A stretch of 64,000 nt of DNA from Octopus sinensis. Lineage: Eukaryota. Positions 9,601 through 56,094 of this stretch are shown in pieces (positions within the stretch are counted from its first letter, which is position 1; each line of letters opens with the position of its first letter). The position numbers and the translations under genes were made by a program. The stretch spans positions 104,408,001 to 104,472,000 of the forward strand of contig NC_043000.1 in assembly GCF_006345805.1 (NCBI RefSeq). Reading direction: 5' to 3'. A model generated the notes under the pieces. The model saw nothing but the letters and a program-made list of their open reading frames with translations. It was not told the DNA's origin and did no database searches.

Positions 9601-9629
9601 TTCATAATGATGAAGCACTATATCTTTTA

Positions 9630-9790
9630 GGTGCAGGCATGGCTGTGTGGTAAGAGGTCTCTTTCCCAACCATATGGTTCTGAGTTCAGTGCCATTGCAT
9701 GGCTTTTAGGTGGGTGTCTTCTACTGTGACCCTGAGCTGATCAACACTTTGTGAGTGGATTTGATAGATGGAAGCTGAAAAAAAGCCCAT
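9630..9790 (+). mobile_element. tRNA-derived SINE family A, 5' part
   Basis: GGCATGGCTGTGTGGTAAG (A-box-like)...GAGTTCAGTGCC (B-box-like); matches the full copy at 25784. Confidence 0.7.
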
Positions 9791-9859
9791 TGTATATGTG
9801 TGTGCGTGTGTGTGTGTATACATACACACACACACACACACATATATATAAATTGAAGA

Positions 9860-10117: not shown

Positions 10118-11809
10118 GTACACTTCAATTAATATACTCAGTCTACTGACAAATATATGAGAGCATTTTTTGACATAGACTTTTAGATGGTTGTGTGTGT
10201 GTGTGTGTGTGCTTGTGTGTTTGCTTCTTGTTGTCTTGACATCAAGTGATAGCTTTAAGTAAGTGTCACAGCTATGCAAATGGTGTCCTTCATTTTCAAT
10301 GTTCTGAAAACATATCTAGTCATGGGTAAAAATTGCCTTACTTGGAAACAGGTGAGGGTTGGTGATAGGAAAGGCATCCAGCCATAGAAAATCCATCTCA
10401 ACAAATTCCGTCTAACCTATATGAGCATTACATATGAGAGATGGTTCAACAAATACAATCAGACAATTAATTATACATTTGACTGTGTATATATTTCAAT
10501 CTTGGGAATATACATCTCAAAGAAGATCTATTTATATAAAAAAGTTTTTTTATTCTACATTTTGTTTAGGATTAATGTGTTTATAATGAATGTCAAAATT
10601 CAACAAAGATTTTTTTGTTACAAAATAACGTATTCAGTTTAAACAGAAGAATAGTCTCTGTCCATAATGCAGGAAATTATTTTGTAGCAGATTGTCTATT
10701 CAATTCAAATACAATATCCTTTTGTATGCCTCTGTATGTGCTTAGTAGTTTGTGTTGGTTAGGCTTATAAACCATCAATCTTCTATTCCTTATGATCACT
10801 TCTACATAGCACAGTCTTTTCAACCAATCTGCAATGCTTAACTAAAAAACAATTATAACACTTAACAATTTTGTGTGCCATCTTTGAGAAGGCACCATGC
10901 TAATTTACTCTGCATCACTTCAATTTTGTTAAAACTGATACTAAAAATACTTTCCAAGATAGGATTGAATTACAACAAGCCAATCTGTCATAGTTCTGTG
11001 AAATCTTTCCAGTGAGGTTTAATATGTTCAAGCAAAAACTGAGAATATGAGAAAAATGTCATGGATTTGCGATATTGAGTGTTAGTTAAAATTGGTTGGT
11101 GTATAGAGTGGAAAAAGCTGACATCAAGGTAATGCCTATGATACTGCACAGAGCCTCCCAGATTGGCATGAGAGGGGGAGGAAGTTATCCTCAAATCAGA
11201 TATCTAGCTTGAGTAAATGCAAGAGAGTAGACTCTGCTGAAGTACCCAAGGACCAACTGGTCATATTAAGACATGCAATGGATTAACTCTATTACCCAGC
11301 TAAGACACAGCAGGGTTTGAACTCATAACCCCCAAAAAATCAAAACAAATATGGAATACCACTTTAGATTGATAATTTATCAACTCCAAGATGATGAAAG
11401 GTAGAGCTAACATTGATAGGATTTGAACACAAAATGCAAGAAGTTGAAATAAATACTTCATGGCATTTCATCTACTGCTCAAACAACTGTCAATTTGCCA
11501 GTTATTGACAGAGCAACTTAAACACAACACATCATCTAAAGGTTAAAGCCAAAAATACAAGCATTTTTCAGTCTTCATGCAGCCAAACATGTTGACAATA
11601 ATCAAACTCTCCTAGTTTTACAATCAATATTTTCAAATGTGTTCTCATTGCTTTCTTTACTACAAGCTGCTTCAACTAGAGTCAGTTCTGACCTCATTGA
11701 CACATTTAGTAGTGTTTCTAGCTACATTACATAAAATATACGTAGGCAGGAGAGCTCACAGACATGCATGTGTGTATTAAAAAATGCTTATGTGCACATG
11801 AATATGCAG

Positions 11810-14735: not shown

Positions 14736-14879
14736 ACAGAGATTATTAATCTAGGGTTATGCATGTTCAGCTTTTATTTAAGTTAATTAGCCTTAAGGCT
14801 AATAGGGAGGTGTTTAAAAGTTTTATATATATACTAGTAGAGATATCCGGCCTTGCTTGAGATTAAAATGGCATAGTCT

Positions 14880-15150
14880 TTTTATTGTTTTACTTGTTTC
14901 AGTCATGTGACTGCAGCCATGCTGGGGCAACGCCATTGGTCGAACAAATTAACCACACGATTTATTCTTTGTAAGCCTAGTACTTATTCCATCAGTATCT
15001 TTTACGAAACCACTAAGTAAACACAGCAAAATAGGCTGTCAAGCAATGGTGGGGTACAAACACAAGCACATACACATATATGCAACAGTCTTCTTTCAGT
15101 TTCCATGTATGAAATCCACTCACAAGGCTTTGATCAGCTTGAGGCTATAA
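14880..15150 (-). mobile_element. tRNA-derived SINE family A, 3' part
   Basis: TTTTACTTGTTTCAGTCATGTGACTGCAGCCATGCTGG...TTCTTTCAGTTTCC...AAATCCACTCACAAGGCTTTG. Confidence 0.75.
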
Positions 15151-15168
15151 TATATATATATATATATA

Positions 15169-15520: not shown

Positions 15521-16395
15521 TAGCACACTGGTAGATAAAGCAATTAAGGGTATGAAGCCAAGAAAAGCCCCCAGCCCATCAGGAATCACTGCTGAGATGC
15601 TTAAAATATCTGGTGGTATGGGTTATGGCTTAGTCACCCATATTGTAAACTAGGTAGTTCATGATGGAGTCATACCCAATGACTGGCATAGCAGCACCAT
15701 AGTCAACTGCTACAAGGGTAAAGGTGATGCTTTAGACAGAAATAACTACATGGGTATCAAACTGCTGGATCAGGAGATGAAGATCATAGCCCAACAAATT
15801 AGGGAGAGAGACTGCTTAGATGAGATGCAGTTCGGTTTTGTGTCAGGTAGAAGCACCACTGATGCTATATTCCTGGTACAGCAACTGTAGGTGAAATACC
15901 TAGCCAAAGATAAACCCCTACACTTGGCTTTTGTGGACTTGGAGAAAGCTTTGACAGGGCCCCCCCGATTGCTTATCTGGTGGGCAATGTAGAAACTAGG
16001 GATTGATGAATGGTTAATAAGGGCTGGCTCCCATGCTGGTGGCACGTAAAAAGTACTATCTGCATATGGCCAATGCCAGTACCCACTGACTGGCTCTTGT
16101 GCTGATGGCACATAAAAAGCATCATCCAAATGTGTCTGATGCCAGTATCCCCTGACTGGCCCCCGTGCCAGTGACATGTAAAAAGCACTATCCAAACATG
16201 ATCAATGCCAGGCCCGCCTGACTGGCTCCTATGATGGTGGCATGTAAAAAGCACCCACAACATTCATGGAGTGGTTGGCATCCAGCTGTAGAAACATTGC
16301 CAGATCAGATTGGAGCCTGGTGCAGCCGCAGGCTCTCCAGTTCATCAAACCCAAGCCATCATGGAAAATGGATGTTAAACGATGATGGTGACGAT
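15521..16395 (+). mobile_element. RTE-clade LINE reverse transcriptase fragment plus 3' tail
   Basis: KAPSPSGITAEMLK...IPNDWHSSTIVNCYKGKGDALDRNNY...EMQFGFVSGRSTTDAIF...LAFVDLEKA, with stops, followed by the RTE tail. Confidence 0.9.
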
Positions 16396-23464: not shown

Positions 23465-23529
23465 ATGGTGAGATTTTTCTTTAGCAGAGAAAAAGTTAGT
23501 CATTTGATGCGAACAGTTTCATCGAAATG
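23465..23529 (+). CDS. ADHFE1: ADHFE1 coding exon 1 (mitochondrial-targeting-like N-terminus)
   Basis: MVRFFFSREKVSHLMRTVSSK+TG|gtgagt. Resembles the vertebrate N-terminus (RARVAYLLRQL, from memory), is basic and Ser-rich, and ends in phase 2. Confidence 0.7.
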
Positions 23530-24399
23530 GTGAGTTTATTAAACATTTTTGTTATTAATGCTCGACGGAGTAGTTGCCCGAAGCAGATTGATATACTAAT
23601 ATTAGACCAAGAAATGCCTATGGTAGCACATATATACAATCAAACACGCGAACTAGCAACTTCAATTATTTGTTTCTTAGTCTCGGTTATTTTATTTTGT
23701 GTGGGCTGGCTGGAGGCAATAAATTCGCGAATATATATATATACAAGATTTTAAAACTTGCAATCTTTGCATTTTGAAGTTAACGGGCTTAACGAGAAAT
23801 TTGGTTGACTGTGAGCAAGTCAAAGTGATTACATAAAAGTTCCTTTACTGAGTACGAGAGATACATAAAACGTGCTGCGAGCGATAAGACAGTGTAATGT
23901 TTTGAGGTAATTTCCTTAATTGCAGAAAGAATAATTATAAACGAAAGACGGAGGCGACCGGTGTCTGCAGTCTTTTATTATTATATTTTCTTTTTATTTC
24001 TTGTTGGCATTTTAATGAGACCACGATCGATTCTTTTGCGCAGACACAAACACAGCTGGGTATTTGGGAATTCACTTCTAAACCACGTGATTTTTGGTTC
24101 GCTTTCTCTGCACGACACTCCAGCCAAGTGTTTTGCCACGGCTTTGAATTAACGGAAAGTGTTGAAATCTAGTTGGCGGAAACCGTCATCTCTGCACATA
24201 TATCTGTCAGGGAGAAAGCCAGTGTGCTTGATAGAAACCATCTTCGATAGTTTGTGTAACTCGGACGGATACTTATTCCCGTCTAAGTTACACAGATACA
24301 CAAATAATACTTCATTACTCTTGCCATCAAAATGCGACGCGGGTATAATTGTGTTGTTGAGAAAGTTCCTTTCCAACTATGAAGTTTAGGATATATATT

Positions 24400-24539
24400 T
24401 GTACAGCCGTGGCTGTGTGGTGAGAAGCTTGCTACCTAACCACATGGTTCTGGGTTGTGTCACCTTGGCTAAGTGTCTTCTATAGCCACTGGTCGACCAA
24501 AGCCTTATGTATAGAGACGGAAACTGAAAGAAGCCCGTC

Positions 24540-24581
<42 letters not shown>

Positions 24582-24790
24582 CTTTGTCTCCCCCCACCAC
24601 CACTGTTTGACAGCTGGTGTTGGTGTGTTCACGCCCCTGATACTTAGCACTTTGGCAAAAAAGACCATAGAAGAAGTACCAGACTTGAAAATAATAAGTA
24701 TTGGGGCTGATTCGTTCAACCAAAATTCTTCAAATCAATGCCCCAGCATGGCTGTGGTCTGATGACTGAAACTAGTGAAGGATAAAAGAT
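24400..24790 (+). mobile_element. tRNA-derived SINE family A
   Basis: GGCTGTGTGGTGAGAAGCTTGC...GACCAAAGCC...CCCCAGCATGGC...GACTGAAAC. Confidence 0.8.
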
Positions 24791-24873
24791 ATTTCTATAT
24801 ATAAATTTATATCTTTATTTTATTATATACACATATATGTTTATATATAAATCTCTCTCTCTCTCTCTACTCT

Positions 24874-25150
24874 TTTACTTGTTTCAGTCATTTGACTGCG
24901 GCCATGCTGGAGCACCGCCTTTAGTCGAGCAAATCGACCCCTGGACTTATTCTTTGTAAGCCCGGTACTTATTCTATCGGTCTCTTTTGCCGAACCGCTA
25001 AGTGACGGGGACGTAAACACACCAGCATCGGTTGTCAAGCAATGCTAGGGGTACAAACACATACATACAAACATACACACACATACATATATATATACAT
25101 ATATACGACAGGCTTCTTTCAGTTTCCGTCTACCAAATCCACTCGCAAAG
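24874..25150 (-). mobile_element. tRNA-derived SINE family A, 3' part, young
   Basis: Near reverse complement of 25900-26156; CpGs retained. Confidence 0.85.
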
Positions 25151-25182
25151 CATTTATACAGATGTAACTCTTTGGAATAACA

Positions 25183-25284
25183 ATATTTGCGGCTGAAGAG
25201 AACTTTAAACCATCTTTTATATCAATTATACACTGATGTAAGAAGGGGTTGTTTATAAAGCTTGAAACACGTGTACCGCGATAT
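25183..25284 (+). ncRNA. Minimal type I hammerhead ribozyme (sense to ADHFE1 intron 1)
   Basis: Helix I ATATTTGCGG/CCGCGATAT; core CTGAAGA 25193-25199; helix II GAACTTT/AAAGCTT; GAAA 25264-25267; palindromic helix III CACGTG; GUA triplet with predicted cut after 25275. Confidence 0.8.
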
Positions 25285-25325
25285 CCTTCGTGTTCTGTTT
25301 TTGATTTTATTTGATATATATATGT

Positions 25326-25673
25326 TGTATAAAAGATCGTGGATAAGGCCAAAACAATGCAAAGTAAATGCAAGGTAAATCACAAGAAAACAAATATGTG
25401 AATTAATGTAGACTTACCTTGTATTCAATATTTCAGGGTTATGACTCCATCCTCAAGAAATTGATGAATGTTGCCGATGTGTGTGTGTGGGCTTTCTTTC
25501 TCTTTTTTCACACACACGCACATCGGCAACATTCGTCAATTTCTTGAGGATGGAGTCATAACCCTGAAATATTGAATACAAAGTAAGTCTACATTAATTC
25601 ACAATTTTTTTTCTTGTGATTTACCTTGCATTTACTTCGCATTGTTTTGGCCTTACCCATGATCTTTTATACA
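25326..25673. repeat. Long near-perfect palindrome (about 165 bp arms, about 19 nt loop)
   Basis: 25326-25489 is the reverse complement of about 25509-25673 with few mismatches (ATATTTCAGGGTTATGACTCCATCCTCAAGAAATTGA / TCAATTTCTTGAGGATGGAGTCATAACCCTGAAATAT). Confidence 0.9.
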
Positions 25674-25783
25674 GTACATTATATACAATGCTTCACAGTA
25701 ATTATCCCATATATGTATATTATTATATATTATATACATATATATATATGATTTGAAATGTATAGTATTAAATATCCATCACA

Positions 25784-26156
25784 GGCGCAGGAGTGGCTGT
25801 GTGGTAAGTAGCTTGCTTACCAACCCCATGGTTCCGGGTTCAGTCCCACTATGTGGCACCTTGGGCAAGTGTCTTCTACTATAGCCTCGGGCCGACCAAA
25901 GCCTTGTGAGTGGATTTGATAGGTGGAAACTGAAAGAAACCCGTCGTATATATGTATGTGTTTATGTGTTTGACCCCCCAACATCGCTTGACAACCGATG
26001 GTAGTGTGTTTACATCCCCGTAACTTAGCGGTTCGGCAAAAGAGTCCGATAGAATAAGTACTAGGCTTACAAAGAATAAGTCCTGGGGTCGATTTGCTCG
26101 ACTAAAGGCGGTGCTCCAGCATGGCCACAGTCAAGTGACTGAAACAAGTAAAAGAG
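25784..26156 (+). mobile_element. tRNA-derived SINE family A, full length
   Basis: GGCGCAGGAGTGGCTGTGTGGTAAG (A box), GGGTTCAGTCCC (B box), internal TA/TG microsatellite, tail GACTGAAACAAGTAAAAGAG. Confidence 0.85.
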
Positions 26157-26176
26157 AGAAAAAAAGAAAGAAAGAG

Positions 26177-26268
26177 AGCTGATCTTACCAGTCAGTTTCG
26201 CGTAAAGAATACAATGGAGTGTTAGGTAACAAACCAATTATATAACTTTATGCTCATCAGAGTTAGCT
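26177..26268 (-). ncRNA. Type I hammerhead ribozyme motif, slightly decayed
   Basis: Helix I AGCTAACT/AGATCAGCT (one bulge, one mismatch); CTGATGA 26260-26254; helix II GCATAAAG/CTTTACGC; GAAA 26199-26196; C-TGACTG-G; GUA. Confidence 0.65.
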
Positions 26269-26489
26269 GATATGGAAGGGAATATGGCTACTGCTCTCTA
26301 TTGTCGGAGGTGTATTAGCCACAACTGGTCAGTGGCTGCTGTGAAAAACCTGGTGGAATGTAAAAAGGCCAGGAGATTAGTCTACGAGTTCTGTCTCTTG
26401 GTTGGATATGCTGTGAAACTGGCAAGAGTTATCTTGAAGTGGGGAAAGTGTGTATTAATGTGATGCTCCTGTGGGGATGGGGTGTGTGG

Positions 26490-26860
26490 TAAACAGCCAC
26501 TGCAATATGGAAACAGTTGTTTATGAGGCAACTGGACCCAGTGGACAATATGGAAGTATGTGGGGGCAATGGAAGGCCCCTTCAGAAACTGCTTTAATAA
26601 CCACAAGTCCTCATTCAGCATTTCAACATCCAAGAGAAACATAATGCCACAACCCTAGCCAAGCATGTCTGGACATTGAAGGAAAGCACCATGGAGTACA
26701 ACATAAAGTGGGAGTTCCTAGAAAGAGGCAAAAATACTTCAATAGCAGCAGGAAGTGCAGATTATGCCTGGCTGAGTAGAGAGCAATTTTAAAAGGTATC
26801 CAAAGTCCAGATGTTTACCTGAATTGTGGGAGTGAGGTGTTTAATCCTTGCCTGCATGAA
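26490..26860 (+). mobile_element. Penelope-like element GIY-YIG endonuclease remnant
   Basis: VYEATG...KYVGAMEGPFRNCFNNHKSSF...NATTLAKHVWTLKE...YNIKWEFLE...SRKCRLCLAE, with frameshifts. CA/pyrimidine-rich 3' region extends to about 28110. Confidence 0.75.
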
Positions 26861-27276
26861 AGGAAGTACATTCTATCATACCTGCGCACTCCACTATGAC
26901 TGCAACCACAGATCCCTTGCCTTGACCTTCTGCAAATGACTTTCCTGGCAAGAAGAGTTTGACCAAAGCACACACCAAAGCATCCATGTACACATATGCA
27001 CACCCATATAAGGCAGACACCCACAAAATAAACTGTTTCCCACCACCTACAACACACCCCTTCACACAAATTGTACCCCCCACATACACACAGACCCGCC
27101 ACACACACATACATTGCACGCTAACATACAAAAGCTTCCCACAACTTTATCCTTTACACAAAGGAAATAGACCAACAAACAGCTATTATACCTACATCCC
27201 TGTAAAAAATTATACATATAACACCGCTACACATACCACATCTCCCATCCCCATGGGAGCACCACATTAATAATAC

Positions 27277-27926
27277 TGTTATGAACTTGCCGTCGCTCAA
27301 ACTCGAACCCGGGACCCTACTAAGTCGAGCGACGACGACTGACCAGCTCAGTCGAACGGGAATCCGCCACAGAGAAAAAAACGGTGGTAGGGGATGGCAG
27401 CAAACTCGAACTGGTGACCGGAGATAACAACAACAACAACAGGAAGAGAGAGACAGACATGGCAGAAGGCAATTGCTTACATTTAAGAACAGTTTATAAC
27501 AATTATTACAACATCAAATACAATGTGATACATAGCAGATACATTAAAGAAAATAACATGCAACAGAATTAAAAAAGAAAAAGAACAACAATGCATTTAA
27601 ACATAACACGTTGTTCGAAAACAATCAAAGGCATGCATGATACACCAAGTCCGGAGACAATCAAAACAGTTCAAATTGATGCAATATAGTTCGAAACAGT
27701 TCAACATTAAAGTCTTTCTCTTTCTTTCTTTTCTTCCTCTTTTCCTTCTTTCTCTTTTTAACACTATTCACAATGTTCTCTTTTCTTTGACACAATTCAT
27801 TTTTTTCTCTTCATCAATTCTTTTTTTAGTTCTTTACAACAGATTACAATTTACGTCACAATCTCGTTTCTTTTACAATTCACATCAAAACATAAACAAA
27901 ACATACCGTTACGAACTCCTACTACA
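27277..27926 (-). mobile_element. Solo LTR (650 bp), probably Gypsy-type, inserted into the PLE 3' region
   Basis: Termini TGTAG...TAACA on the minus strand; flanks ATAC/ATAG (4 bp TSD, 1 mismatch); internal TATAAACTGTT; CpG-rich relative to flanks. Confidence 0.6.
27289..27360 (-). other. 72 nt tRNA-like sequence at the LTR 3' end (not a functional tRNA)
   Basis: D-arm-like GACTGAGCTGGTCAGTC, B box GGTTCGAGT, partial acceptor stem CCGTT/GACGG. T-stem and anticodon arm are non-canonical. Confidence 0.55.
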
Positions 27927-28359
27927 ATAGCTGTGCCTTTCCGCTGTAATCTCTCTCTTTTGCTCTACATGTCCCCAATGCTATCTGCCTGTCCTTCTCG
28001 CCACTCTTGACATCCTCTCGCTTGTCATCTCTCACATTCACTGTCTGTCTTTCTCAACGTTGTCGTTGCCTCTCGCCATCACCACCCTCGCATCGACTGC
28101 TGTCATCTAAGTTTTTACAGCTGGTTGCCCTTCCTGGATGCCAACCACTCTGAGAGTGTAATGGGTGCTTTTACGTGCCATTGGCATGTGGGCCAGTCAG
28201 GCGGTACTGGTAATGGCCACGCTCAGATGGTGTTTTTTATGTGCCACTGGCACAAGTACCAGGAAGGCGACGATGGTAACTATCACGCTCAAATGGTGCT
28301 TTTTACATGCCACCAGCACCAAAGCTAGTCAGTTGTTATGCCAACGATCATGAGAAGAA

Positions 28360-29470
28360 CTGCCTTTAGTTCTTGGAGTTTTTAATTTTGTTCTATAATT
28401 TGAGACAACTGTACAGATTCTTTTCACAAGGTTGAAGGGGATGTTTGTCTTCGTGTGCTTTGGGTGATTGGAGGTGAACAGAAGTTGTTGTTTGGAATCA
28501 GTTGGTTTGTAGTGGATATCAGTTTCAATGTTGGTGCCTTTTCTTATAGTTGGTCAAGTATATGGGACTATAGGATGAGGCAATCATCCAAGTAGCGTTT
28601 CCAATTCTCCAACAGGTATTTGTGGAAAGACAGGCCGTATTTTGATTTGGATTCTTCATAAGTTTTTAATTCTAGGTAGGCCATCACCAAGTTTGCATAA
28701 GTGGGGGCAACTTTAGTACCCATTGCAGACCCTGATATCTGTCTGTAGCTATTATTAAAATTCAAAAAGATGTTTTAGAGAATAAACTTAAGGCCTTCGA
28801 TGATAAATTCTTTTTTTATTCTTTCCGGGACCTCATTGGAGTATTTTTCTAGCCAGAATTTAATGGCTTCCAGTCCATTTTGATGTGGGATCGTAGTGTA
28901 AAGGTTTATTACACCAAAGGAGGCAATGAAAATGTCTTTATTGGTATGTTTGGGGAGATGATTTAGTAGGTCCAGGTCATCTCTTACAATACTTGGTATG
29001 TGTTTAAGTACTGGTTTTAAGAGGATATCGATAAAGTTGCTTAATATGTGTGTTTCACAGTTTGGGCCTGCCACAATTGGTCTCAGTTTGAGATCAGTGG
29101 GATGTGGTACAGTGATGCAGGTTGAAGTGAACTTTTTGGAAGCTTCAGTAATTATTTTGCTCTTGTGGATTTTTGGAAGCCCATAGAGGATGCTGGTTTT
29201 GCAATTAAAACTTGTTAGGTAGTCGTATTCCTTTGCTGTTAAGTTATTTCGATGTTGACAAATGAGTGTGTTTGGAGTGGGAAGCTGTTTGTGGGTGTAA
29301 TGGTGTGTGAAGTGAGTAATAAGTTGAACAGTGTGTATGTGGCGAGGGTACTGAAGCAGTCAGTATACAGGTGTGTAGGTGGATGGGAGGGGCGGTTGAA
29401 TGTGGGAGATGTGTGAGAATCTGTGTGGGGTAGTGTCAGATGAAGAGAGGTGGGGAGTTGAGCCAATAAG
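28360..29470 (-). mobile_element. Penelope-like element reverse transcriptase remnant
   Basis: KPRILYGLPKIHK...LRPIVAGPNCET...FGVINLYTTIPH...NFNNSYRQISGSAMGTKVAPTYANLVMAYLE...WKRYLDD (PLE-type RT motifs). Confidence 0.9.
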
Positions 29471-30399
29471 GCACAAAGGAATGAACATTCTTGTTCATGG
29501 CAAAGGTAAGAGTCTGGGTGGCCCCTCTACAGAGACAGTCTGAACACAGACATAGTGAATGACCAGTAGAGAGGAAGTGGCATGCCCATTATAGTAAGAT
29601 AGCAAATCTGCCCATCTATGATGGGAAATAAAGAGATAGTATTGCAAATCTAAACCTTCTATATTCATGAACTATATGGGGTGGGGGTGGGGGAGAATCC
29701 AGAGTTTTAACCAAAAGAAATCAATGGTGATTTATTAATACAAAACTCAATATCCGCTATATAATCATACTTTTTCACATTTTTTTTGCTAAAAACCTCC
29801 TGATTATCTCCTTCATAATCCCGAAAAACATCGTGACCATTTGTCCAGCTGTTTGACTGTGAGGAGGGAACAGACAGACATAATGCCCATTGTAGTAAGG
29901 GAACAGACAGACATAATGCCCATTGCAGGTTGTCAACACCCCTCTCTTTCTCCCTCCCTCTCTGTCTCTCTCTCACACATAATGGGTTTTTTTCTTCAGT
30001 TTCCATCTTCCAGATCCACTCCCAAGGCTTTGGTCAGCCTGAAACTATAGAAGATACTTATCCTAGGTGTCATGCAGTAGGACTGAACCTAAGACCACAT
30101 GGTTTGGAAGCAAGCTTCTTAACTGCACAACCATACCTGTACACACACACATCATACTCACACATACATACATACATACATACATGATGGCTGCCCCCTC
30201 GTTATCGAGTATGGCCATTGCACGAAGCTTAATCAATGTTGTTATCGTGCAATGCCTGTGCAAGAAGATTTTTTTTAAAGTGAAGAAAGGCTGTGCACTG
30301 AGTCAGTCTCACTCACTAAGCAACAGCAGCCATAATCCGAAAAGAAGAGCAAGTCATCATCATCGGTAACCACTGAGCTGCAGGTTTTATGTCGGAATT

Positions 30400-30730: not shown

Positions 30731-31593
30731 GACCTGACATAACATACATACATACATGCATACGTGTGTGTGTGTAATTGATATTAGAACAAGGCATTCA
30801 CGTGCTATGTAACATAATACTTCAGAAAAATGGAACGGAAATGGAAAAAGGATGGAGACTAACTGAGAGAAAGAAAAGGAAAAAAAATGGTTGTGATGAT
30901 ATCATGTGATAGACTTGTATATGTATCAGAGAGAAAAAGAGGAAGAGAAGAAGGCAGAGGAGGGGAATAAGAATAAGATAGGGAGATAAAGGTATATACT
31001 AACAGAAGTAACAAACAAAATTTAAGTATTTTTTTTCCATGAAATGGGACTTAAGACCACAATTTAGATTAGAATTTTGGCCTTGATCAAAGGTACAGAA
31101 AGATGGCTGAGGGAATTGATATAGTGAAAGTATTGAAAAGAAACTATATTATGACATGTTACTCTTTATGTACTAACCAAAGTAATGGAATTTATATTTT
31201 TGTAAGCAAAAGACAAATGAATTAACAAAATAAGATTACTTGTTTCAGTCATTGGACTGTGGTTATGATGGAACACCAACTTGAAGGGTTTTTAGTTGAA
31301 CAAATTGTGCCCTTACCCCTCAGTACTTAATTTATAAACTTTGTATTTATTCTGATGCTCTCTTTTGCTGCACCATTAAGTTATGGGGATGTAAATAAAC
31401 CAACACTGGTTATTAAGTAGGGGACAAATACACGGATACAAGCACAAAGACACACACGTATATATATATATCAGAAATTAACTGCATAAAAGTCAATAGG
31501 AAGAGTACTCCATCCAATGAGAGTACAATATTACTAAATGTTTCAACTACATGTACTTACTGCTATAAGTACATGTAGTTGAAATGGTTAGCA

Positions 31594-31657
<64 letters not shown>

Positions 31658-32640
31658 GCTTGATGGGATTCTTTTAATTACCATCTACGAAATCTACTCA
31701 CAGGCTTTGGCCTGGGGCTATATTAGAAGACACTTGCCCAAGGTTTTACACTGTGCAACTGAACATGGAACTATGTGATTGGAATGCAAACTTCCTACTA
31801 AACAGCCATCTGCCTGCAATACAGCCACACCTGTACCTATTTTGTATATAAAGATTGAATATTTTAATAAAAAAGTTATCAAATGGGTGATAGAATCTGA
31901 GTTTTTGATGTTTTGATTAATGTAGGTTTAACCCATGTCAGCATAGACATTAATTGATGATGATGTAGAACAAAGTAACTGGAGATTGAAGAGTGCTGTA
32001 AGGGGTTTGGGGGAGTGAAATATTTGAAGTGTAGATGAACTATTAAAATTTGCAATGGCTACAGACTCATATACATACACACACACTCACATTTATATAT
32101 TCATGCATCAATGAATGTGAAAAGCTGAGTATACATGCACATCCCTCAACACAGATATTTGACATGGTTTCTACAGCTGGATGCCCTTCCTAATGCCAAC
32201 CACTTTACACAGTGTTCTAGTTGCTTTTTATGTGGCACCAGCACCAATGAGGTTGCATTGAACTGTAGAAACCATGCCAAAACAGACAATTGAAGGCTAG
32301 TGTCATTCTCTGACATGCTAGCTCCTGTCAAATCGTACAACCCATGTTAGTATGGAAAATAGATGTTAAAAGATGATGATGTTGATACATAGGTGTGTGT
32401 CTTGATATTTTGTGAGGGATGTAAACAAGCATCACCACCATACAAGCTATGTTGATTTTTTACCAATCTTCTGTAAAAATTATGTCTGGGCATGAGAGAT
32501 ATTACCTTGATTGGAAACATCTGAGGGTGGGCAACAGGAAGAACATCTACCTATTAAAAAAAATGAACAAATTCTGTCTGACCCATGCAAGCATGAAAAG
32601 TGGACATTAAAAGATGATATGTATATATGTGTGTGCGTGT

Positions 32641-33318
32641 ATATATATAGGGTAGCGAATATTCCTTAGAAATATCACCACCAGTGGTCTAGCATGTATA
32701 AATAGTCAATAGACAACATATTCTTAATATAAAATAGTGTACATTTAAACTACCCTTTAACAGGTAATTTTTACATGCTAGAAGAAGCAGTCAAAATGAC
32801 CAAAACCACATTTAATAGCAATTTTCGAAGGAAATGCAAAATAAAAACTTTTACCTTGTTATTTTTTCTGGTTATACCTAGGTTTCAAATTTCTTTAGCA
32901 AATAAGATAATTTGCTAGGCGAATTCTCATCAGTAACCAGCCTTAACAACTAACTTATAATTCAGAGACAAATAACATGTGTCTCATCATTATATGTTAT
33001 AACCTTTCAAAATTCAGTGTGCAAGTGCAGTTTCAGTCGGCAGTAAATGGATAATGCCAAGCTGATTCTTCAAGAATGCTAAGATCATATTCGTAAGATA
33101 CATATATAGGGTAGCGAATATTCCTTAGAAATATCACCACCAGTGGCCTAGCATGTATAAATAGTCAATAGACAACATATTCTTTATATAAAATAGTGTA
33201 CATTTAAACACAAGAGAAAACTACCTCTTAACAAGTATATTTTTACATGCTAGAAGAAGCAGCCAAAATGACCAAAACCACATTAAATAGCAATTTTCGA
33301 AGGAAATGAAAAATAATA
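32641..33318. repeat. About 205 bp direct repeat (32641-32845 and 33101-33318), period about 460 bp, bracketing a hammerhead
   Basis: GGGTAGCGAATATTCCTTAGAAATATCACCACCAGTGG...CGAAGGAAATG present twice with few differences. Confidence 0.9.
32868..32940 (-). ncRNA. Minimal type I hammerhead ribozyme, intact
   Basis: Perfect 7 bp helix I CTGGTTA/TAACCAG; CTGATGA 32933-32927; helix II GAATT/AATTT extended by TAGCAAAT/ATTTGCTA; GAAA 32886-32883; palindrome CCTAGG; GUA with predicted cut after 32875. Confidence 0.85.
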
Positions 33319-36300
33319 ATATCACTGATGAAAGAAGATCCTTATAAATCTGAGACCTTGTCCCTTCCTAAAAATTCTTTGATAGTCTTCTTCACTGAAT
33401 TGTTCTCATTGAAACTCTGTCATCCTAAAAGGAAATAAGTACATTTTGGTAATTGCTTTCCTTTTATCCTGAGCATATTCATATATAAATTTGTTTACTC
33501 ACTACACCTTTCTATCTCAGAAAACATGTTCATCAAGTTGTTTTTTTTTCAGTTTCTCACTAAATCAAGTAATTGCTGAACCCAACCCCCAGCCAATCCA
33601 GCTCTTTTCTCAATCACTTGTTATCTCTACAGCCACTCCAATTCCTCTCAACGTCACTGCTATCTCTGCTATCTCTAAACACCCCACTCACACTCTTGTA
33701 CAACATCCTCTTCTATCCACTCTGTACTACTTATACTACACCTACTGTTCCCTGTGGGCAAGCCCTCCTCTCATACTTTGACTTCCCTTTATCTCTAACT
33801 CTCACCCACCTTCCTCTTTCTCTATATCTTACTGAGCTAGCCGAATATCTTTTCAATTGTAAGAGGGCTTCCTTTGTCTTTCTATCATACTATAATCTCT
33901 CAGTTCTGCTTCCTCTCTCAGCTGAGACGTCCTTGTCTTGCAAGCTTTTGGGTGCTGGTACCACGTAAAAAGCACCCATTCTAGTGCCACATGAAAAGCA
34001 CCTGTGCTGGTGTCACATAAGAAACACCCATGCTGGTGCCACATCAGAAGCAACCATGTTGCTTCCACTTAAAAATCACCCATGTTGGTGCTACATATAA
34101 AGCACTGGAGCCGGTGCTTCCTAAAAAGTATCCAGTACTCTCTGTAAAGTGGTTGGCATTAGGAAAAAACCAGCTGTAGAAACCATGTCAAGACAGACAA
34201 TTGAAGTCTGGTGCTGTGCTCCAACTTGCCAGCTCCTGTCAAACCATCCAATGCATGCCAGCATGGAAAATGGACATGAAATGATGGTCATGATGATCAC
34301 ACACACACACAATGCCCCAGGTTAGACTGAGCCTCTTCATGGCATTTCCCAGTAAAATCTTTGCTGGCCCTACTCCTGTCTGACTACTTATTTCTTCCAA
34401 ATAAAAATAGTGTATACATTTAGGTTACCTGAATGTAGTTGGACAAAATGAGGAAGCCTGTTCATGATGATGTAGTTTGCTAAAAATAGTAGTCAAATTA
34501 CACACTTCTGTCAAAAAAAGGGAAAGACTGTATTGGATAATATAGATGTAGATACCCTAAAGAGATTGAATGATCTTGACTGGAACATATCTGATTGTAG
34601 ATCTGCTCAGTCAATTTCAACAACATATATATGTTTTTGAAATCAATGATATAACATATATCAAATGTAACCAGGCATATATAAGTCAAGATATGTATGC
34701 TTCAAAGTATTTGGAGGATGTGTAATTGAATAAATAAATAAATAAATAAATGACAGACAGTACATTTGTAGAACAAAAATAGACCTTCAAATATTACTAT
34801 TAATGATTTTAACTTTGAATGTATAGATGACTTTGGTTGGAATTGAACTCAGAACATAGTGCAAAACATTATTGCAGGCACAGCTTTGCAATCAAGTGGT
34901 TCCTGGTTTGATTCAAGTGTTTAGTACCTTGTTTTCCATAGTCAACTTAAGGTTTGTGAGTGAAATTGAGGTGATGGAAGCTGTACCGATGAGCTGTACT
35001 TGTTCTTTGTTGGTAGTCTTAATTTGTTACCAGGTTTAACTACTTGCAGGGCTGACCCAATACAAGGCACATGGGTTTAAATGTCTGTGATATCACATCT
35101 GTTCATGCGTCTGAGATGGCTGCTAGTAGTAGTTGCTGCTGCTGTTACTACTATTGCTACTGCAGCTGCTGCCACCCAACTTAATGGCAGATCTTCACTC
35201 ATTAGTAAGGATTAACTATTAGCACACTGATGTGTCTTCTCTATGTCTATTCTTCTAATCCATCCATACTGTCTCCTCTTCCTCACACTTTGCATTAACC
35301 ACTATGCTTAGTCTTTCTACTCCACAATATCGATCTTTTATAATTCTTTCTTCACACATTTTTCTCCAGTAGCTGCCATCTTGCAACTGTTCATGAGGAA
35401 CACAAACCATGTCGGCTTCACTGTCTCAGAGGACCTATGAAAGTTTTGGGCACAAGCCTTTCCTCCAGACCAGATCATTAAAAAAAAAATAGTCTTGAAT
35501 CTATGAACTTGCAAGCTTTATACCACCTACACCAAAGCTTACTTAGTTCACCAATCTCTTGTTTCTCAAGAGATTGTTTCTCAATCTCTTGTTTCTCATC
35601 CCAAAATACTGTATTAAGTCTCTTCATTAAACCTATTCTTCTATATCAACAATCTGAAACTACCTCCCTGCTATGTTTTCACTACATGTATCAAACTGTA
35701 GAAATTTAAGCTTAATATCAACCATATTGACCTTACTAAACTGATAGGGTTTCAAAAGGCTATGGGCACTGATCTACCTTTTAGAGATAAAGTAACTTTT
35801 AATAATCCTTTCTACTATAGGCATAAGGTCTGAAATTTTGGGGGATGGGCCTAGTATATTACATTGACCTTAGTGCTCAATTGGTCCTTATTTTATCAAC
35901 CCTGAAAGGATAAAAGGCAAAGTCTATTTCAATGGAATTTGAACTCAGAATGTAAGGAGCCAAGATAAGCATTTTGATTAGCATTTTGTGCAATGTGCTA
36001 AAGATTGTGTCAGATTATTTTCTTAGTAGCTTTTGATAATAACTGTGTAAAATATGACACTCTCAATTGATCAGAATATATACTCTATTAAAAATCACTT
36101 AAGGTTAATGCAGTAGGTCATGTCAGAAATATGACTATTTAATTGATTTAGCTAATTAATTAATAAAAATAAAAAATAATAGATGAAAAAATTAATTTTT
36201 ATTTAAAGAAATGACCTTGATTTTTTTGGTATTCTAATCTGCCAGCATAATACAGAAAGGCAGCTACCAATCTCTCAAGAGGTTAAACATCAGATACAAC

Positions 36301-37670: not shown

Positions 37671-39541
37671 AAATGTTGCTTTGTGTATGTGTGTGTAATT
37701 TGTAATCCTGATAAAGTCAGATTGTTAAGTTCGAAGAGTAGAAAAGTTCACAATGAGTGACATTGCAGTTCAACTAAAACTAGTCTTATGGATGAAGAAT
37801 CTAGAATATTCTTTTCTTCTGTTTCCACAAGTAGCACCTTTGTAGTGGGAGTATTTGTTAAATAAAATTTCTTTGAGCAGCAAAATATGTGAAATTATTA
37901 CTCTTATTGATTACTAGAGGATTTCTGTTGGACAAACTTGTTCATACATCTGCACATATATGTGCAGGCCTGGGCAGGCTTTTTTGAGAAAGATTAGCAG
38001 TTGCCCATGCATCCAAGTTACCCTTCTTCACTCCACTGCTGTTATACCAGTTTGCATCAATACAGAAGTATCAGTGCAAACTTGAAACCTTTCTATTGGA
38101 TAACAACAGTGTCATTGCAGGTGAAAATTTATTCAAACAATTCACTTGTAAAGTGAAGTTGAATGCATGAAATTGTGTCATAGTCATATCATTATGATAT
38201 GAATAAAGTCCATCTCTGCATGAGATAGCTACTATAAAGTCAATGATACCCTACCTGCAAAAGTTGTAAATTTTTACTTGTTAGAAACTGAGCAAAGCAT
38301 TGGTTGATATCCATTTGCTTTTCTCTGAGAACATTCATTGATATAATTGCAGAAAATCTACAAGATAAGGAAAGAGCTACAAAGACACACCAAATTGGAA
38401 ACTGATGTTGCTGAGAGTATGAACATCAAGACATGGTATTTTGAACAATACTGGAGTGTTGTTCAAAATGTTTGTAGTATTTAGTTATAGCTTTTTATAT
38501 TGCAAGTTCAAATCCTGCAGAGATCAGTTTTATCTTTCCCGAGTTGATTAAAATAAAGTATCAGCCCAGCCAAGTAGTGACTGATTTAATATTCTTACAA
38601 AGATTCCTGATGTGAATGAAACTAAAATAGAAGATAAAAACACATTTTTAACTGTAATATTACTACTTTTATTGCAAGGGTATTGTCTTAAGATTTACAA
38701 TGTAAAAAATGATGTTAAATAATCTTTAACCTAATTTAATATTCATAAATCCAACCTGTATTCAATAAACTCAATTGACAAACATTTATGCATAAAATAT
38801 TTCCATATTTTATAAATGATAATGCAAATCCTGTGATATTCAACATTAACTCTGAAATTAATACTGATCCATCTTCTGGCCCATTGAAAGGTACTCAATG
38901 AATTTATTATTAAATAAGGACAAACTTGATAGAGTAGCTGTTAAACACCTTCTTGTATTTAGCTTGGTCCCTCTATCATTCTTTGTTCAAATTCTTCCAA
39001 TGTTGCCATTGCCTTTTATTCTCCTACTGTTAGTAAAATATATATCAGCAAATATTATTCTTAGTTTATTCAATTATACTTCTCTTCCTAATGTGTGGGT
39101 TTGTGTCTTGGATTGGTAAAATTGTTAGTATGTTGGGCAAAATGCCATTATTCTTTTACTTATTTCAGTTATTTGACTGTGGCTATGTTGGAGTACCACC
39201 TTAAGTTGAACAAATCAACCCCAGGACTTATTCTTTGTAAGCCTAGTACTTATTCTATTGTCTCTTTTGCTGAACTGCTAAGTTATGGGGATGTAAACAT
39301 ACCAACATCAGTTGTCAAGCAATGGTGAGGTGACAAACACACATACACATACACACACACACATAAATATATATATATATATATATTGTGACCGCGTGTG
39401 TACCGTTGGCGATTTTTTTTCCTCTGTCTTCCCTTCTCTGGATCTTTCCTGAGCGTCCAATAATACTATATTTGTTCCACGTCCTCACGTTGTTGTGTTT
39501 TCTCTTTGTGTTTTCATGCTTGGATTAACTATATATATATA

Positions 39542-40823: not shown

Positions 40824-40858
40824 GAACATCTATTCGCCAGATTTTGTCCCACCAAGAG
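40824..40858 (+). CDS. ADHFE1: Probable ADHFE1 exon 2 (35 nt; (W)NIYSPDFVPPR(G))
   Basis: Strong ttattctctttttcag acceptor and AG|gtaagt donor. It bridges exon 1 (phase 2) to exon 3 (phase 1) in an open frame. The peptide is not conserved. Confidence 0.55.
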
Positions 40859-54569: not shown

Positions 54570-54845
54570 TTAGATGAGATGCAGTTCGGTTTTGTTCCCG
54601 GGTAGAAGCACCACTGATGCCATATTCCTGGTTCGACAACTGCAGGAGAAATACCTAGATAAAGATAAACCTCTCTACTTGGCTTTCGTGGACTTGGAGA
54701 AAGCCTTTGATAGGGTCCCCCGATCCCTTATCTGGTGGGCAATATGGAAACTGGAGATTGATGAATGGTTAATAAGGGCTGTACAGGCCCTATACAGAGA
54801 GGCCGTTAGTAAGGTTAGGATTGGCAATGAGTATAGTGAAGAATA
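54570..54845 (+). mobile_element. RTE reverse transcriptase fragment
   Basis: LDEMQFGFVPGRSTTDAIFLVRQLQEKYLDKDKPLYLAFVDLEKAFDRVPR. Confidence 0.9.
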
Positions 54846-56094
54846 TACCTCAGTATATTTTTCTGGTTGAGAATCTGGCATTGTCTTCATATTTTTTAAC
54901 AATTTTTTAACCATTATTTCTCAAATCATTTTGAAGAATGTTTCTATTTCTTATTTCTTGTGGATTTGAGTGACTCTTTAAATTGTTAGTGTATTTCCCC
55001 ATAGAATTGTTTCTAGTTACATTTTCTGTTGAATATTTCTTCTGCTTATATAACCTTCTATTTATGCTAAAGCTTGTCCTTGTTTGGACTGTGTATCTTA
55101 TATCATGTTTCTTGAACAATGTTTTTGAAAATGTTGTTTCTACATTTTTCTTTAGATTCTATTTTTAGCTTATTTCAGTTTATAATAAGAATTTCCATGT
55201 TGAATTTTTGTGTTTAACATCTAAAAAACATTTTTGTAGTCTTGTGTACTTGCAAGTAAAATAAATAAATATCATAATTTTATACACACACATGCATGCA
55301 CACACACACACACATTCACACACACACACTCACGCACACAAACACACACACACACACACGCACACATTGTTTTTATGTTGTTATGATAAGAACAATTTTA
55401 CATTAGTCTGATCAGTTACTCCATACTTTTATAGAGTACAAATATATAATTCTTACACACACATATTATTGACAGTGACTTCAAAGTTCCAGGCAGCTAA
55501 GCCATCATTGGACTGCAGCCTAGCTGGCTAAAACTTCGACGTCACTGTCAACAACATTCTTGTGTAAGAATCTCTGTCTCTCTCTCTTTCTTTATATAAA
55601 TAAATAAATAAATAAATAAATAGATCAAAGGTTCTTCCTGAGTCATGAGACCAGTTTCCCAGATTCTGTGGTGTATATATTCTCTCCTTAGATGGGATGC
55701 CAGTCCATCACAGGATTACTCATTTTTGCCAGCTGAGTGGACTGGAATAATCCCTGGTTTAGGAACCAAAAGTACAATCATAAGATTGCAATATCCTAAC
55801 CATTAAACCATGTATCTCCCCATATGGGTGGTGCATTGTGTTCTTGTGCAAAACACCTTATACACTGTGCACCTTTTCAGTTTATGTCAATTTTTTCATC
55901 AAATTGACATAAACTGAAAAGGTGCACTCTGATGTACACTCTGTACTGTACAATTTGATCTACAGTACAGAGCTAATGTACAGTACACATTTGATCAGTT
56001 TTAATACATGCATGCATGCACACACACACACACACACACACACACTAATTCTTATTCTTATTATTAGTAAATTTGGGATTCTCCTGTTTTACAG

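What the first reader, a model, noticed from the sequence alone, without database searches (positions are those of the whole stretch)
25183..25284. Catalytically intact-looking hammerhead ribozyme in the sense strand of a housekeeping gene intron
All core nucleotides are present (CUGAAGA, GAAA, GUA cleavage triplet), helices I and II pair, and helix III is the palindrome CACGUG. Minimal type I hammerheads with a palindromic helix III are characteristic of Penelope-like elements and are reported to cleave best as dimers (established). Here it would be transcribed in every ADHFE1 pre-mRNA, about 1.7 kb into a 17 kb intron. Cleavage after 25275 could influence co-transcriptional splicing or release the downstream hairpin RNA. 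Weak monomer activity may be why it is tolerated (inference).
Basis: partly seen in the sequence, partly recalled or inferred. Interest (0 to 1): 0.75.

Follow-up and report, generated by a model that had tools for sequence, protein, structure and literature searches.

The report
Retroelement-type hammerhead motif in octopus intron
A complete hammerhead-ribozyme motif really does sit on the sense strand in the first intron of an octopus ADHFE1 gene, but it looks like a lone leftover of a ribozyme-carrying jumping gene (Penelope-like/retrozyme class), not a device serving the gene.

Summary
At 25187-25281 (+) there is a type I hammerhead motif with a perfect core: CUGAAGA, GAAA, and U-A with the predicted cut after 25275. 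Helix I has 6 bp, helix III is the palindrome CACGUG, and helix II is a 64-nt imperfect arm.

- **More than chance:** 0 of 300 shuffles give such a motif. Three occur in 347 kb of octopod DNA against 0.01 expected.
- **Gene context:** The window is an Octopus ADHFE1 locus (95% identical to the O. bimaculoides protein). Exon 1 ends at 23529 and exon 2 starts at 40824. The motif lies 1.66 kb into this 17.3-kb intron, on the sense strand.
- **"Catalytically intact" is overstated:** no Rfam hammerhead hit, G.U instead of G10.1-C11.1, a mismatch in helix II, and the hammerhead fold is about 10^-4 of the predicted ensemble. No same-strand partner exists for dimer cleavage.
- **Surroundings are transposon debris:** SINE-like copies, a Penelope-like RT fragment, and a second hammerhead element on the other strand. 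The downstream hairpin is a separate foldback repeat.
- **Orthologous conservation:** could not be tested, because the O. bimaculoides assembly has gaps there.

Verdict: probably a neutral retroelement relic, a new member of a known kind, of low-to-moderate interest.

The parts
25187..25192 (+). Helix I, 5' strand (UUGCGG)
   Evidence: Pairs with 25276-25281.
25193..25199 (+). Core box C3-A9 (CUGAAGA)
   Evidence: Direct reading. It is one of only two CTGANGA boxes between 24000 and 34000 that complete a motif.
25200..25263 (+). Helix II arm, 64 nt. It has G.U at 10.1-11.1, an A x C mismatch at the third position, then a long imperfect hairpin.
   Evidence: folded alone: -12 kcal/mol, z = -1.95.
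25264..25267 (+). Core G12 A13 A14 plus A15.1 (GAAA)
25268..25273 (+). Helix III/loop 3 palindrome CACGUG. In a monomer it gives C15.2-G16.2 closing an ACGU tetraloop. Two copies could form an 8-bp ACACGUGU duplex (-10.3 kcal/mol).
25274..25275 (+). U16.1 and A17. The predicted scissile bond is 25275/25276.
   Evidence: with Hertel numbering as used in PMC4209133.
25276..25281 (+). Helix I, 3' strand (CCGCGA)
25158..25305 (+). The whole single-copy fragment that carries the motif. The 5'-truncated end of a SINE-like copy bounds it on the left. A short (TA)n run and the foldback repeat bound it on the right.
   Evidence: No other copy exists in the window or in 304 kb of other octopod loci.
23465..23529 (+). 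ADHFE1-like exon 1 (MVRFFFSREKVSHLMRTVSSKW), with a GTGAGT donor at 23530
   Evidence: tblastn with the O. bimaculoides and Argonauta proteins; splice sites.
40824..40858 (+). ADHFE1-like exon 2 (NIYSPDFVPPR), preceded by ...tttttcag
25315..25685 (.). Foldback repeat: a 169-bp near-perfect stem, -267 kcal/mol as + strand RNA. It is a separate repeat family, not part of the hammerhead fragment.
   Evidence: copy in O. sinensis L008 28573-28832, flanked by (TA)n.
32868..32940 (-). Second hammerhead motif of the same architecture: CUGGUUA-CUGAUGA-[40 nt]-GAAA-CCUAGG-UA-UAACCAG. It is antisense to ADHFE1.
32640..33325 (-). The 686-bp element carrying the second motif: a ~220-bp repeat, a spacer, the hammerhead, then the ~220-bp repeat again (period 459-472 bp). 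Its 3' end abuts a (TA)n/(CA)n run. It is absent from the gap-free orthologous site in O. bimaculoides.
28338..29359 (-). Fragment of a Penelope-like-element reverse transcriptase, truncated at its 3' side
   Evidence: It is 72-84% identical to O. bimaculoides P0121. The relative P0222 combines RVT_1 with GIY-YIG.

Best explanation
The motif is a solitary remnant of a hammerhead-carrying retroelement. That class comprises Penelope-like elements and their non-autonomous derivatives, the non-LTR retrozymes. The remnant landed in intron 1 of the octopus ADHFE1 gene in the sense orientation, next to a (TA)n tract.

In the parent element such a hammerhead would process multimeric element RNA, alone, as a dimer, or helped by the element's protein (inference from the family). 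Here only about 150 bp survive (25158-25305), wedged between a SINE-like copy and an unrelated foldback repeat.

The fragment is transcribed as part of every ADHFE1 pre-mRNA. That follows from its position and strand, not from RNA data. It most likely cleaves very slowly or not at all, for four reasons:
- Helix III is only 2 bp plus a tetraloop.
- There is no partner copy on the same transcript.
- The 10.1-11.1 pair is G.U and helix II has a mismatch.
- No loop-loop tertiary contacts are recognisable.

Its presence is therefore probably neutral for the gene. Shown here: anatomy, excess over chance, gene context and transposon context. Inferred: origin from a PLE/retrozyme, low activity, neutrality.
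For: - **Architecture matches the family.** It is type I with an open helix I, a perfect core, a 2-bp helix III with a palindromic tetraloop, a short helix I and a long helix II (family features in PMC4209133, and PMC7229834).
- **The motif class is real in octopus DNA.** There are 3 hits in 346.6 kb against 0.01 expected. All three share GAAA-C-NNNN-G-UA with different palindromes (CACGUG, CCUAGG, CAGCUG) and unrelated helix I sequences.
- **The second motif is clearly in a mobile element.** It sits in the same intron inside a discrete 686-bp partly tandem element that ends at a (TA)n/(CA)n run. That element is absent from the gap-free orthologous site in O. bimaculoides. This fits the partial-tandem structure and microsatellite insertion bias described for PLEs (PMC8557442).
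- **A PLE RT fragment lies 3 kb away** in the same intron.
- **The third motif** (O. sinensis L005) also lies about 110 nt upstream of a (TA)n run.
- **The immediate surroundings are transposon copies**.
- **Low activity is expected.**
  - The hammerhead fold is about 1.6e-4 of the predicted ensemble, and the MFE pairs core UGAAG with CUUUA of helix II.
  - Single PLE min-hammerheads showed no detectable cleavage in vitro (PMC4209133).
  - An Anolis PLE hammerhead cleaved only when the element's protein was added (PMC11167929).
Against: - No second copy of the 25158-25305 sequence was found in the window or in 304 kb of other octopod loci. A repeat family for this particular fragment is therefore not shown.
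- It is not inside a recognisable pseudo-LTR. The nearby PLE RT is on the opposite strand and separated from it by other repeats.
- It lacks two features listed for metazoan PLE min-hammerheads: the unpaired nucleotide between A9 and 10.1, and G10.1-C11.1.
- Its helix II arm (64 nt) is much longer than described.
- All 13 core positions and all three helices are intact. That is mildly unexpected for an old neutral relic, although any search finds only the intact ones.
- A mussel retrozyme hammerhead lacks most of the canonical loop-loop nucleotides yet still cleaves at about 0.1 per min from a single genomic repeat (PMC7229834). Monomer inactivity therefore cannot be assumed for a motif without recognisable loop contacts.
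Confidence: 0.68

Rival explanations
1. The motif is an active intronic ribozyme. It self-cleaves the nascent ADHFE1 pre-mRNA after 25275, either as a tolerated side effect or as a brake on expression. It would compete with splicing during the time RNA polymerase II needs for the remaining 15.5 kb of intron 1, in the manner proposed for the CPEB3 ribozyme.
For: - The core is perfect, it is on the sense strand, and it lies early in a long first intron.
- A mussel retrozyme hammerhead that lacks most canonical loop-loop nucleotides cleaves from a single genomic repeat at about 0.1 per min.
- There is a precedent for intronic ribozymes tuned to co-transcriptional splicing (PMC10919898).
Against: - The 10.1-11.1 pair is G.U, helix II has a mismatch, and no tertiary contacts are recognisable.
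- The hammerhead fold is a very minor predicted conformer.
- No Rfam hit appears.
- No evidence of conservation exists, though that test was inconclusive.
- Slow hammerheads in introns do not impair splicing (Dye 2006 and Fong 2009, as summarised in PMC2995048 and PMC10919898).
- A preprint reports retrozymes depleted from vertebrate introns, which suggests that active ones are selected against.
Confidence: 0.14
2. It is a chance match. An AT-rich 64-kb window happens to contain the 13 core bases with pairing flanks.
For: - The core is short.
- No Rfam hit appears.
- The fold z-score is only -1.35.
- No homologous copy was found.
- By my rough estimate of about 0.001 per window, a 2-3 Gb genome would hold some tens of chance motifs.
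Against: - 0 of 300 shuffles reach it.
- A second motif with the same unusual features lies 7.6 kb away, and a third in O. sinensis. Together that is about 300 times the shuffle expectation.
- The palindromic helix III is a family hallmark that chance does not favour.
Confidence: 0.1
3. The hammerhead and the downstream 370-nt hairpin form one functional unit. The ribozyme would cut 40 nt upstream of the hairpin and free it as a long double-stranded RNA precursor for small RNAs or for editing.
For: - The two are adjacent: the cut is at 25275 and the hairpin starts at about 25315.
- The hairpin is extremely stable (-267 kcal/mol, 169 bp).
Against: - The hairpin belongs to a separate foldback repeat family.
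- Its copy in O. sinensis L008 is flanked by (TA)n and has no hammerhead beside it.
- The left end of the foldback here is truncated by about 45 nt compared with its right end.
Confidence: 0.03

Closest known systems
Minimal type I hammerheads of Penelope-like elements (Cervera & de la Pena 2014, PMC4209133)
   Same: - Type I topology and a perfect CUGANGA/GAAA/UH core.
- Very short helix III with a palindromic 15.2-16.2/loop 3.
- Short helix I and a long helix II.
- Mostly found as dispersed single motifs.
- PLE sequences are present nearby.
   Different: - No unpaired nucleotide between A9 and 10.1.
- G.U instead of G10.1-C11.1.
- The helix II arm is 64 nt with internal loops, against 6-8 bp plus a loop.
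- It is not inside a recognisable pseudo-LTR.
- The neighbouring PLE RT is on the other strand.
Type I hammerheads of invertebrate non-LTR retrozymes, e.g. mussel (Cervera & de la Pena 2020, PMC7229834)
   Same: - Mollusc host and low-GC context.
- Helix III of 2 bp capped by a tetraloop, described as typical of invertebrate motifs.
- The canonical loop 1-loop 2 nucleotides are missing, as in the mussel motifs.
- The second motif in this intron lies in a partly tandem unit of about 460 bp.
   Different: - Retrozymes are tandem repeats of about 170-400 bp, each with a hammerhead.
- The motif in question has no tandem partner and no repeat unit.
- Helix II is far longer than the canonical 4 bp.
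Amphibian satellite/retrozyme hammerheads that cleave as dimers (newt, axolotl)
   Same: A weak helix III with a palindromic loop, so that two copies can form an extended helix III. Here that would be the ACACGUGU duplex, -10.3 kcal/mol.
   Different: Those occur in long tandem arrays, so a partner is always on the same transcript. Here there is none. They also keep the canonical loop-loop contacts.
Conserved intronic self-cleaving ribozymes of amniotes/mammals: the ultraconserved intronic hammerheads (de la Pena & Garcia-Robles 2010, cited in PMC7229834) and the CPEB3 HDV-like ribozyme (PMC10919898)
   Same: Sense-strand position inside a long intron of a protein-coding gene, and the idea that cleavage competes with co-transcriptional splicing.
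   Different: - Those are conserved across orthologous introns and fold stably as monomers.
- Here conservation is not shown: the O. bimaculoides assembly has gaps, and the Argonauta intron cannot be aligned.
- The context here is transposon debris.

Membership tests
Hammerhead ribozyme (general) | Conserved core: C3 U4 G5 A6 N7 G8 A9, G12 A13 A14, A15.1-U16.1, H17 | tested here: met
   CUGAAGA at 25193-99, GAAA at 25264-67, U25274, A25275.
Hammerhead ribozyme (general) | Three helices around the core | tested here: met
   Helix I has 6 bp. Helix II has 7 of 8 core-proximal pairs and then a long hairpin. Helix III has 2 bp plus a tetraloop. However, the hammerhead fold is 3.4 kcal/mol above the MFE and about 1.6e-4 of the ensemble.
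Hammerhead ribozyme (general) | G10.1-C11.1 pair next to the core | tested here: not met
   G25200 faces U25263, giving G.U. The other two octopod motifs have G.U and U-A.
Hammerhead ribozyme (general) | Match to a curated Rfam hammerhead covariance model | tested here: not met
   No hammerhead family is listed at gathering score or at E<=10 in stretches of 1301 and 171 nt. The same holds for the two sister motifs. The models may simply not cover variants with a minimal helix III.
Hammerhead ribozyme (general) | Site-specific self-cleavage giving 5'-OH and 2',3'-cyclic phosphate | not testable with these tools
   Needs in vitro transcription or RNA end sequencing.
Hammerhead ribozyme (general) | Loop 1-loop 2 tertiary contacts for activity at physiological Mg2+ | tested here: inconclusive
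   Helix I runs into unpaired flanks after 6 bp and helix II is a long rod. No canonical loop nucleotides can be assigned by eye. No tool here models tertiary contacts.
PLE minimal hammerhead (PMC4209133) | Type I motif with a very short or absent helix III and palindromic 15.2-16.2/loop 3 | tested here: met
   CACGUG sits between A15.1 and U16.1. ACACGUGU is self-complementary, -10.3 kcal/mol.
PLE minimal hammerhead (PMC4209133) | Short helix I (4-5 bp) and long helix II (6-8 bp) | tested here: met
   Helix I has 4 G-C pairs plus G.U and A-U. Helix II has 8 positions with 7 paired. It continues into a 64-nt arm, longer than described.
PLE minimal hammerhead (PMC4209133) | Unpaired nucleotide between A9 and 10.1 | tested here: not met
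   Treating G25200 as bulged breaks the helix II register (direct reading).
PLE minimal hammerhead (PMC4209133) | Located in the pseudo-LTR of a PLE, same strand as the ORF, usually in partial tandem | tested here: not met
   The only PLE coding remnant is on the minus strand at 28338-29359. No direct repeat flanks the motif. Most genomic PLE hammerheads are, however, reported as solitary motifs from truncated copies.
PLE minimal hammerhead (PMC4209133) | Belongs to a multi-copy consensus family with compensatory changes | tested here: inconclusive
   There is no sequence homologue in 64 kb plus 304 kb. Two other motifs share the architecture but not the sequence. A whole octopus genome could not be searched by DNA.
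Non-LTR retrozyme (PMC7229834) | Tandem repeats of about 170-400 bp, each unit carrying a type I hammerhead | tested here: not met
   There is no tandem unit around 25187-25281. The sister element at 32640-33325 is a 1.5-unit partial tandem of about 460 bp with one hammerhead.
Conserved intronic ribozyme (amniote intronic hammerheads, CPEB3-type) | Conservation at the orthologous intron position across species | tested here: inconclusive
   Window 24217-29927 has no collinear match in the O. bimaculoides locus L002, but L002 3857-14398 is 58% N. Argonauta intron 1 cannot be aligned.

The most novel reading that the evidence does not exclude
The motif is a working ribozyme that has been co-opted or tolerated. 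With help from host factors or a PLE protein it would cut a fraction of nascent ADHFE1 pre-mRNAs 1.75 kb into intron 1. That would set the output of the gene during the minutes RNA polymerase II needs for the remaining 15.5 kb. It would be an invertebrate, retroelement-derived counterpart of the CPEB3 intronic ribozyme.
Probability: 0.06. Interest if true: 0.6.

Novelty: new member of a known kind. Interest (0 to 1): 0.25.

Why it matters
If the ordinary reading holds, the value is mainly as annotation.

- Octopus genomes carry dispersed hammerhead motifs of the PLE/retrozyme type with a 6-nt palindromic helix III and a non-canonical 10.1-11.1 pair.
- Current Rfam models do not report them, so they would be missed in routine annotation.
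- One of them sits on the sense strand of a first intron. That makes it a convenient natural test case for whether weak retroelement ribozymes in introns are tolerated because they are slow.
- A recent preprint reports that retrozymes are depleted from vertebrate introns, which gives that question some weight.

If the motif cleaved in vivo, it would be a rare example outside vertebrates of a ribozyme acting on a host pre-mRNA.

Tried and rejected
- **Rfam scans.** I scanned at gathering score and at E<=10 over the motif and both sister motifs. No hammerhead family appeared. This does not rule out a hammerhead, because even the compact O. sinensis motif was missed.
- **A plus-strand PLE endonuclease.** I guessed that plus-strand ORFs at 26230-26800 encoded one, downstream of the motif. 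Pfam and tblastn with 120 PLE proteins, including one with GIY-YIG, gave nothing there. Rejected.
- **One large inverted duplication.** I considered that 24854-26171 is a single duplication that the motif later disrupted. The two SINE-like copies are no closer to each other (82%) than to other copies (84-86%). The left copy is simply a 5'-truncated copy in the opposite orientation. Rejected.
- **Homology between the flanks of the two hammerheads in the window.** None was found.
- **The motif as a 3' module of a SINE subfamily.** None of the eight or more SINE-like copies in the window carries it.
- **Hammerheads beside PLE RT genes in nine further octopod loci.** Only one was found (L005), 3.8 kb downstream of the ORF and not in a pseudo-LTR.
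- **Exact 24-mer search of JGI metagenome contigs.** No hit.
- **An excess of G.U pairs in the foldback stem** as a sign of strand-specific constraint. Only 3 of 169 pairs are G.U. Rejected.

Full report
**What is there.** The sequence at 25187-25281 on the + strand reads UUGCGG-CUGAAGA-[64 nt]-GAAA-CACGUG-UA-CCGCGA.

In hammerhead numbering it breaks down as follows:
- C3-A9 at 25193-25199.
- G12-A14 plus A15.1 at 25264-25267.
- A six-base palindrome at 25268-25273.
- U16.1 at 25274 and A17 at 25275, so the predicted cut is between 25275 and 25276.
- A 6-bp helix I: four G-C pairs, one G.U and one A-U.

The 64-nt arm between A9 and G12 pairs at 7 of its 8 core-proximal positions. It has G.U at 10.1-11.1 and an A x C mismatch at the third position. 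It then continues as a long imperfect hairpin.

**Is it more than chance?** I wrote a descriptor with these requirements: a perfect core, at least 4 Watson-Crick pairs in helix I, at least 6 of 8 pairs at the base of helix II, an insert of up to 90 nt, loop 3 of up to 12 nt, and UH.
- The window has one hit, against a mean of 0.023 in 300 dinucleotide-preserving block shuffles.
- When loop 3 must also be palindromic, no shuffle gives a hit.
- Relaxing the helices slightly recovered a second motif, on the minus strand at 32868-32940: CUGGUUA-CUGAUGA-[40 nt]-GAAA-CCUAGG-UA-UAACCAG.
- That makes three motifs in 346.6 kb against 0.01 expected.

All three share GAAA-C-NNNN-G-UA. Their palindromes differ and their helix I sequences are unrelated. 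The descriptor was designed on the first motif, so that one is not an independent test. The other two are.

**How good a hammerhead is it?** The core is perfect, but several things argue against "catalytically intact".
- No Rfam hammerhead model reports it at gathering score or at E<=10, even in a 171-nt stretch. The two sister motifs are also missed, so the models may not cover this variant.
- The 10.1-11.1 pair is G.U. Cervera and de la Pena list G10.1-C11.1 as highly conserved in PLE hammerheads.
- The predicted MFE pairs core UGAAG with CUUUA of helix II. The hammerhead fold is 3.4 kcal/mol less stable and about 1.6e-4 of the ensemble.
- Helix III is only A-U and C-G closing an ACGU tetraloop.
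- Two copies could form an 8-bp ACACGUGU duplex (-10.3 kcal/mol). No second copy exists on the + strand of the window, and the palindrome of the minus-strand motif is not complementary to it.

**Where it is.** The window is an Octopus genome segment.
- Exon translations are 95% identical to O. bimaculoides hydroxyacid-oxoacid transhydrogenase (ADHFE1-like, P0241) and 86% identical to the Argonauta hians protein.
- tblastn with these proteins places exon 1 at 23465-23529 (start codon, GTGAGT donor) and exon 2 at 40824-40858. Further exons lie at 52765, 56089, 59857, 61178, 61498, 62158 and 62633.
- Intron 1 is 17,294 nt. The motif begins 1,657 nt into it on the sense strand, and 15.5 kb of intron follow the predicted cut.

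**What surrounds it.** The motif sits in about 150 bp of single-copy sequence (25158-25305).
- On the left is the 5'-truncated end of a SINE-like repeat (24854-25157). That repeat has at least eight copies in the window.
- On the right, after a short TA run, is a 370-bp foldback (25315-25685). Its + strand RNA forms a 169-bp stem at -267 kcal/mol.
- The foldback is a repeat family of its own. A copy in O. sinensis (L008 28573-28832) is flanked by (TA)n and has no hammerhead beside it. The left end of the foldback here is truncated compared with its right end.
- The "hammerhead releases the hairpin" idea therefore rests on two unrelated insertions lying side by side.
- Three kilobases further, on the minus strand, lies a fragment of a Penelope-like-element reverse transcriptase (28338-29359). 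It is 72-84% identical to O. bimaculoides P0121, and its relative P0222 combines RVT_1 with GIY-YIG.

The second hammerhead lies in a discrete 686-bp element (32640-33325).
- Its structure is repeat, spacer, hammerhead, repeat, with a period of 459-472 bp.
- Its 3' end abuts a (TA)n/(CA)n run.
- The whole element is missing from the gap-free orthologous site in O. bimaculoides.
- Partial tandems and insertion into microsatellites are described for Penelope-like elements (PMC8557442). Short tandem units with type I hammerheads define animal retrozymes (PMC7229834).

**Conservation.** The O. bimaculoides ADHFE1 locus (L002) aligns with the window up to 24217 and again from 29927.
- Nothing collinear lies in between, and the motif has no match anywhere in the 56.5-kb locus.
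- However, 7.1 kb of the 12.3-kb orthologous interval in that assembly are runs of N.
- Absence in O. bimaculoides therefore cannot be claimed.
- Argonauta intron 1 (8 kb) is not alignable at all.

**Most likely explanation.** The motif is a lone remnant of a hammerhead-bearing retroelement of the PLE/retrozyme class. It is carried passively in the intron.
- In the parent elements the ribozyme is thought to process multimeric element RNA.
- Single PLE minimal hammerheads showed no detectable cleavage in vitro.
- An Anolis PLE hammerhead cleaved only when the element's protein was present.
- Slow hammerheads placed in introns do not disturb splicing, whereas fast ribozymes do (Dye 2006 and Fong 2009, as summarised in PMC2995048 and PMC10919898).
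- A weak or dead ribozyme in intron 1 would therefore be neutral.

I put this at about 0.68. The main uncertainty has two sources. No homologous copy of this particular fragment was found in the limited octopus DNA I could reach. In addition, a mussel retrozyme hammerhead without the canonical tertiary contacts still cleaves at about 0.1 per min from a single genomic repeat, so activity cannot be excluded from sequence alone.

**Rivals.**
- An active intronic ribozyme, tolerated or regulatory: about 0.14.
- A chance motif: about 0.10.
- A ribozyme-plus-hairpin unit: about 0.03.

**Comparison with known families.** It works like, and most resembles, the minimal type I hammerheads of Penelope-like elements and the helix III form (2 bp plus tetraloop) of invertebrate retrozymes.
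- It fails three listed features of the PLE set: the extra nucleotide after A9, G10.1-C11.1, and a pseudo-LTR location.
- It also fails the tandem-repeat criterion of retrozymes.
- I therefore file it as a new, somewhat deviant member of a known kind, not as a confirmed family member.
- It is unlike the conserved intronic ribozymes of amniotes in everything except position.

**Verdict.** Interest is low to moderate.

Noticed in passing
window 32640-33325 (minus strand; hammerhead at 32868-32940): A second complete hammerhead motif (CUGAUGA ... GAAA-CCUAGG-UA, 7-bp helix I) sits inside a 686-bp partly tandem element of about 460-bp period. The element ends at a (TA)n/(CA)n run and is antisense to ADHFE1. 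It is absent from the orthologous gap-free site in O. bimaculoides, so it is a lineage-specific, retrozyme-like insertion.
   Followed up: yes
window 25315-25685: A near-perfect foldback with a 169-bp stem (-267 kcal/mol, only 3 G.U pairs) is transcribed in the sense pre-mRNA. It belongs to a repeat family with a copy in O. sinensis (L008 28573-28832) flanked by (TA)n. It is a candidate substrate for double-stranded-RNA pathways such as editing or small RNAs.
   Followed up: partly
window 28338-29359 (minus strand): A fragment of a Penelope-like-element reverse transcriptase lies here (YGLPKIHK ... RYLDD motifs). It is 72-84% identical to an O. bimaculoides protein and is cut short at its 3' side by another repeat at 28110-28352.
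   Followed up: partly
window 24409-24724, 24854-25157, 25783-26171, 9629-9815, 14877-15152, 29991-30139, 31236-31471, 39149-39385 and others: An abundant SINE-like repeat of about 390 bp has an internal (CA/TA)n tract and what reads like a tRNA-type B box (GGTTCCGGGTTCAGTCCC) at one end. At least eight copies occur in the window, and copies are also present in the O. bimaculoides and Argonauta loci.
   Followed up: partly
window 10847-10950 (minus strand): A U6 spliceosomal RNA match scores 53.4 bits (gathering score 44), about 12.5 kb upstream of ADHFE1 exon 1. The 5' stem is poorly paired, so it may be a pseudogene.
   Followed up: no
window 15654-15887 and 54574-54867 (plus strand): These open frames carry non-LTR reverse-transcriptase motifs (FGFVSGRSTTDAIFLVQQL; FPGRSTTDAIFLVRQLQEKY...AFVDLEKAFDRV). 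They are LINE fragments, the second inside an ADHFE1 intron.
   Followed up: no
L005 16093-16147 (O. sinensis, plus strand): A compact hammerhead motif of the same type (GUCU-CUGAUGA-[28 nt]-GAAA-CAGCUG-UA-AGAC) lies about 110 nt upstream of a (TA)n run and 3.8 kb downstream of a PLE RT-endonuclease ORF. A degenerate relative with the same CAGCUG palindrome is at L003 13221-13311 (minus strand).
   Followed up: partly
L002 3857-14398 (O. bimaculoides ADHFE1 intron 1): Four runs of N totalling 7.1 kb fall exactly in the interval orthologous to window 24217-29927. This assembly therefore cannot decide whether the motif is conserved.
   Followed up: yes
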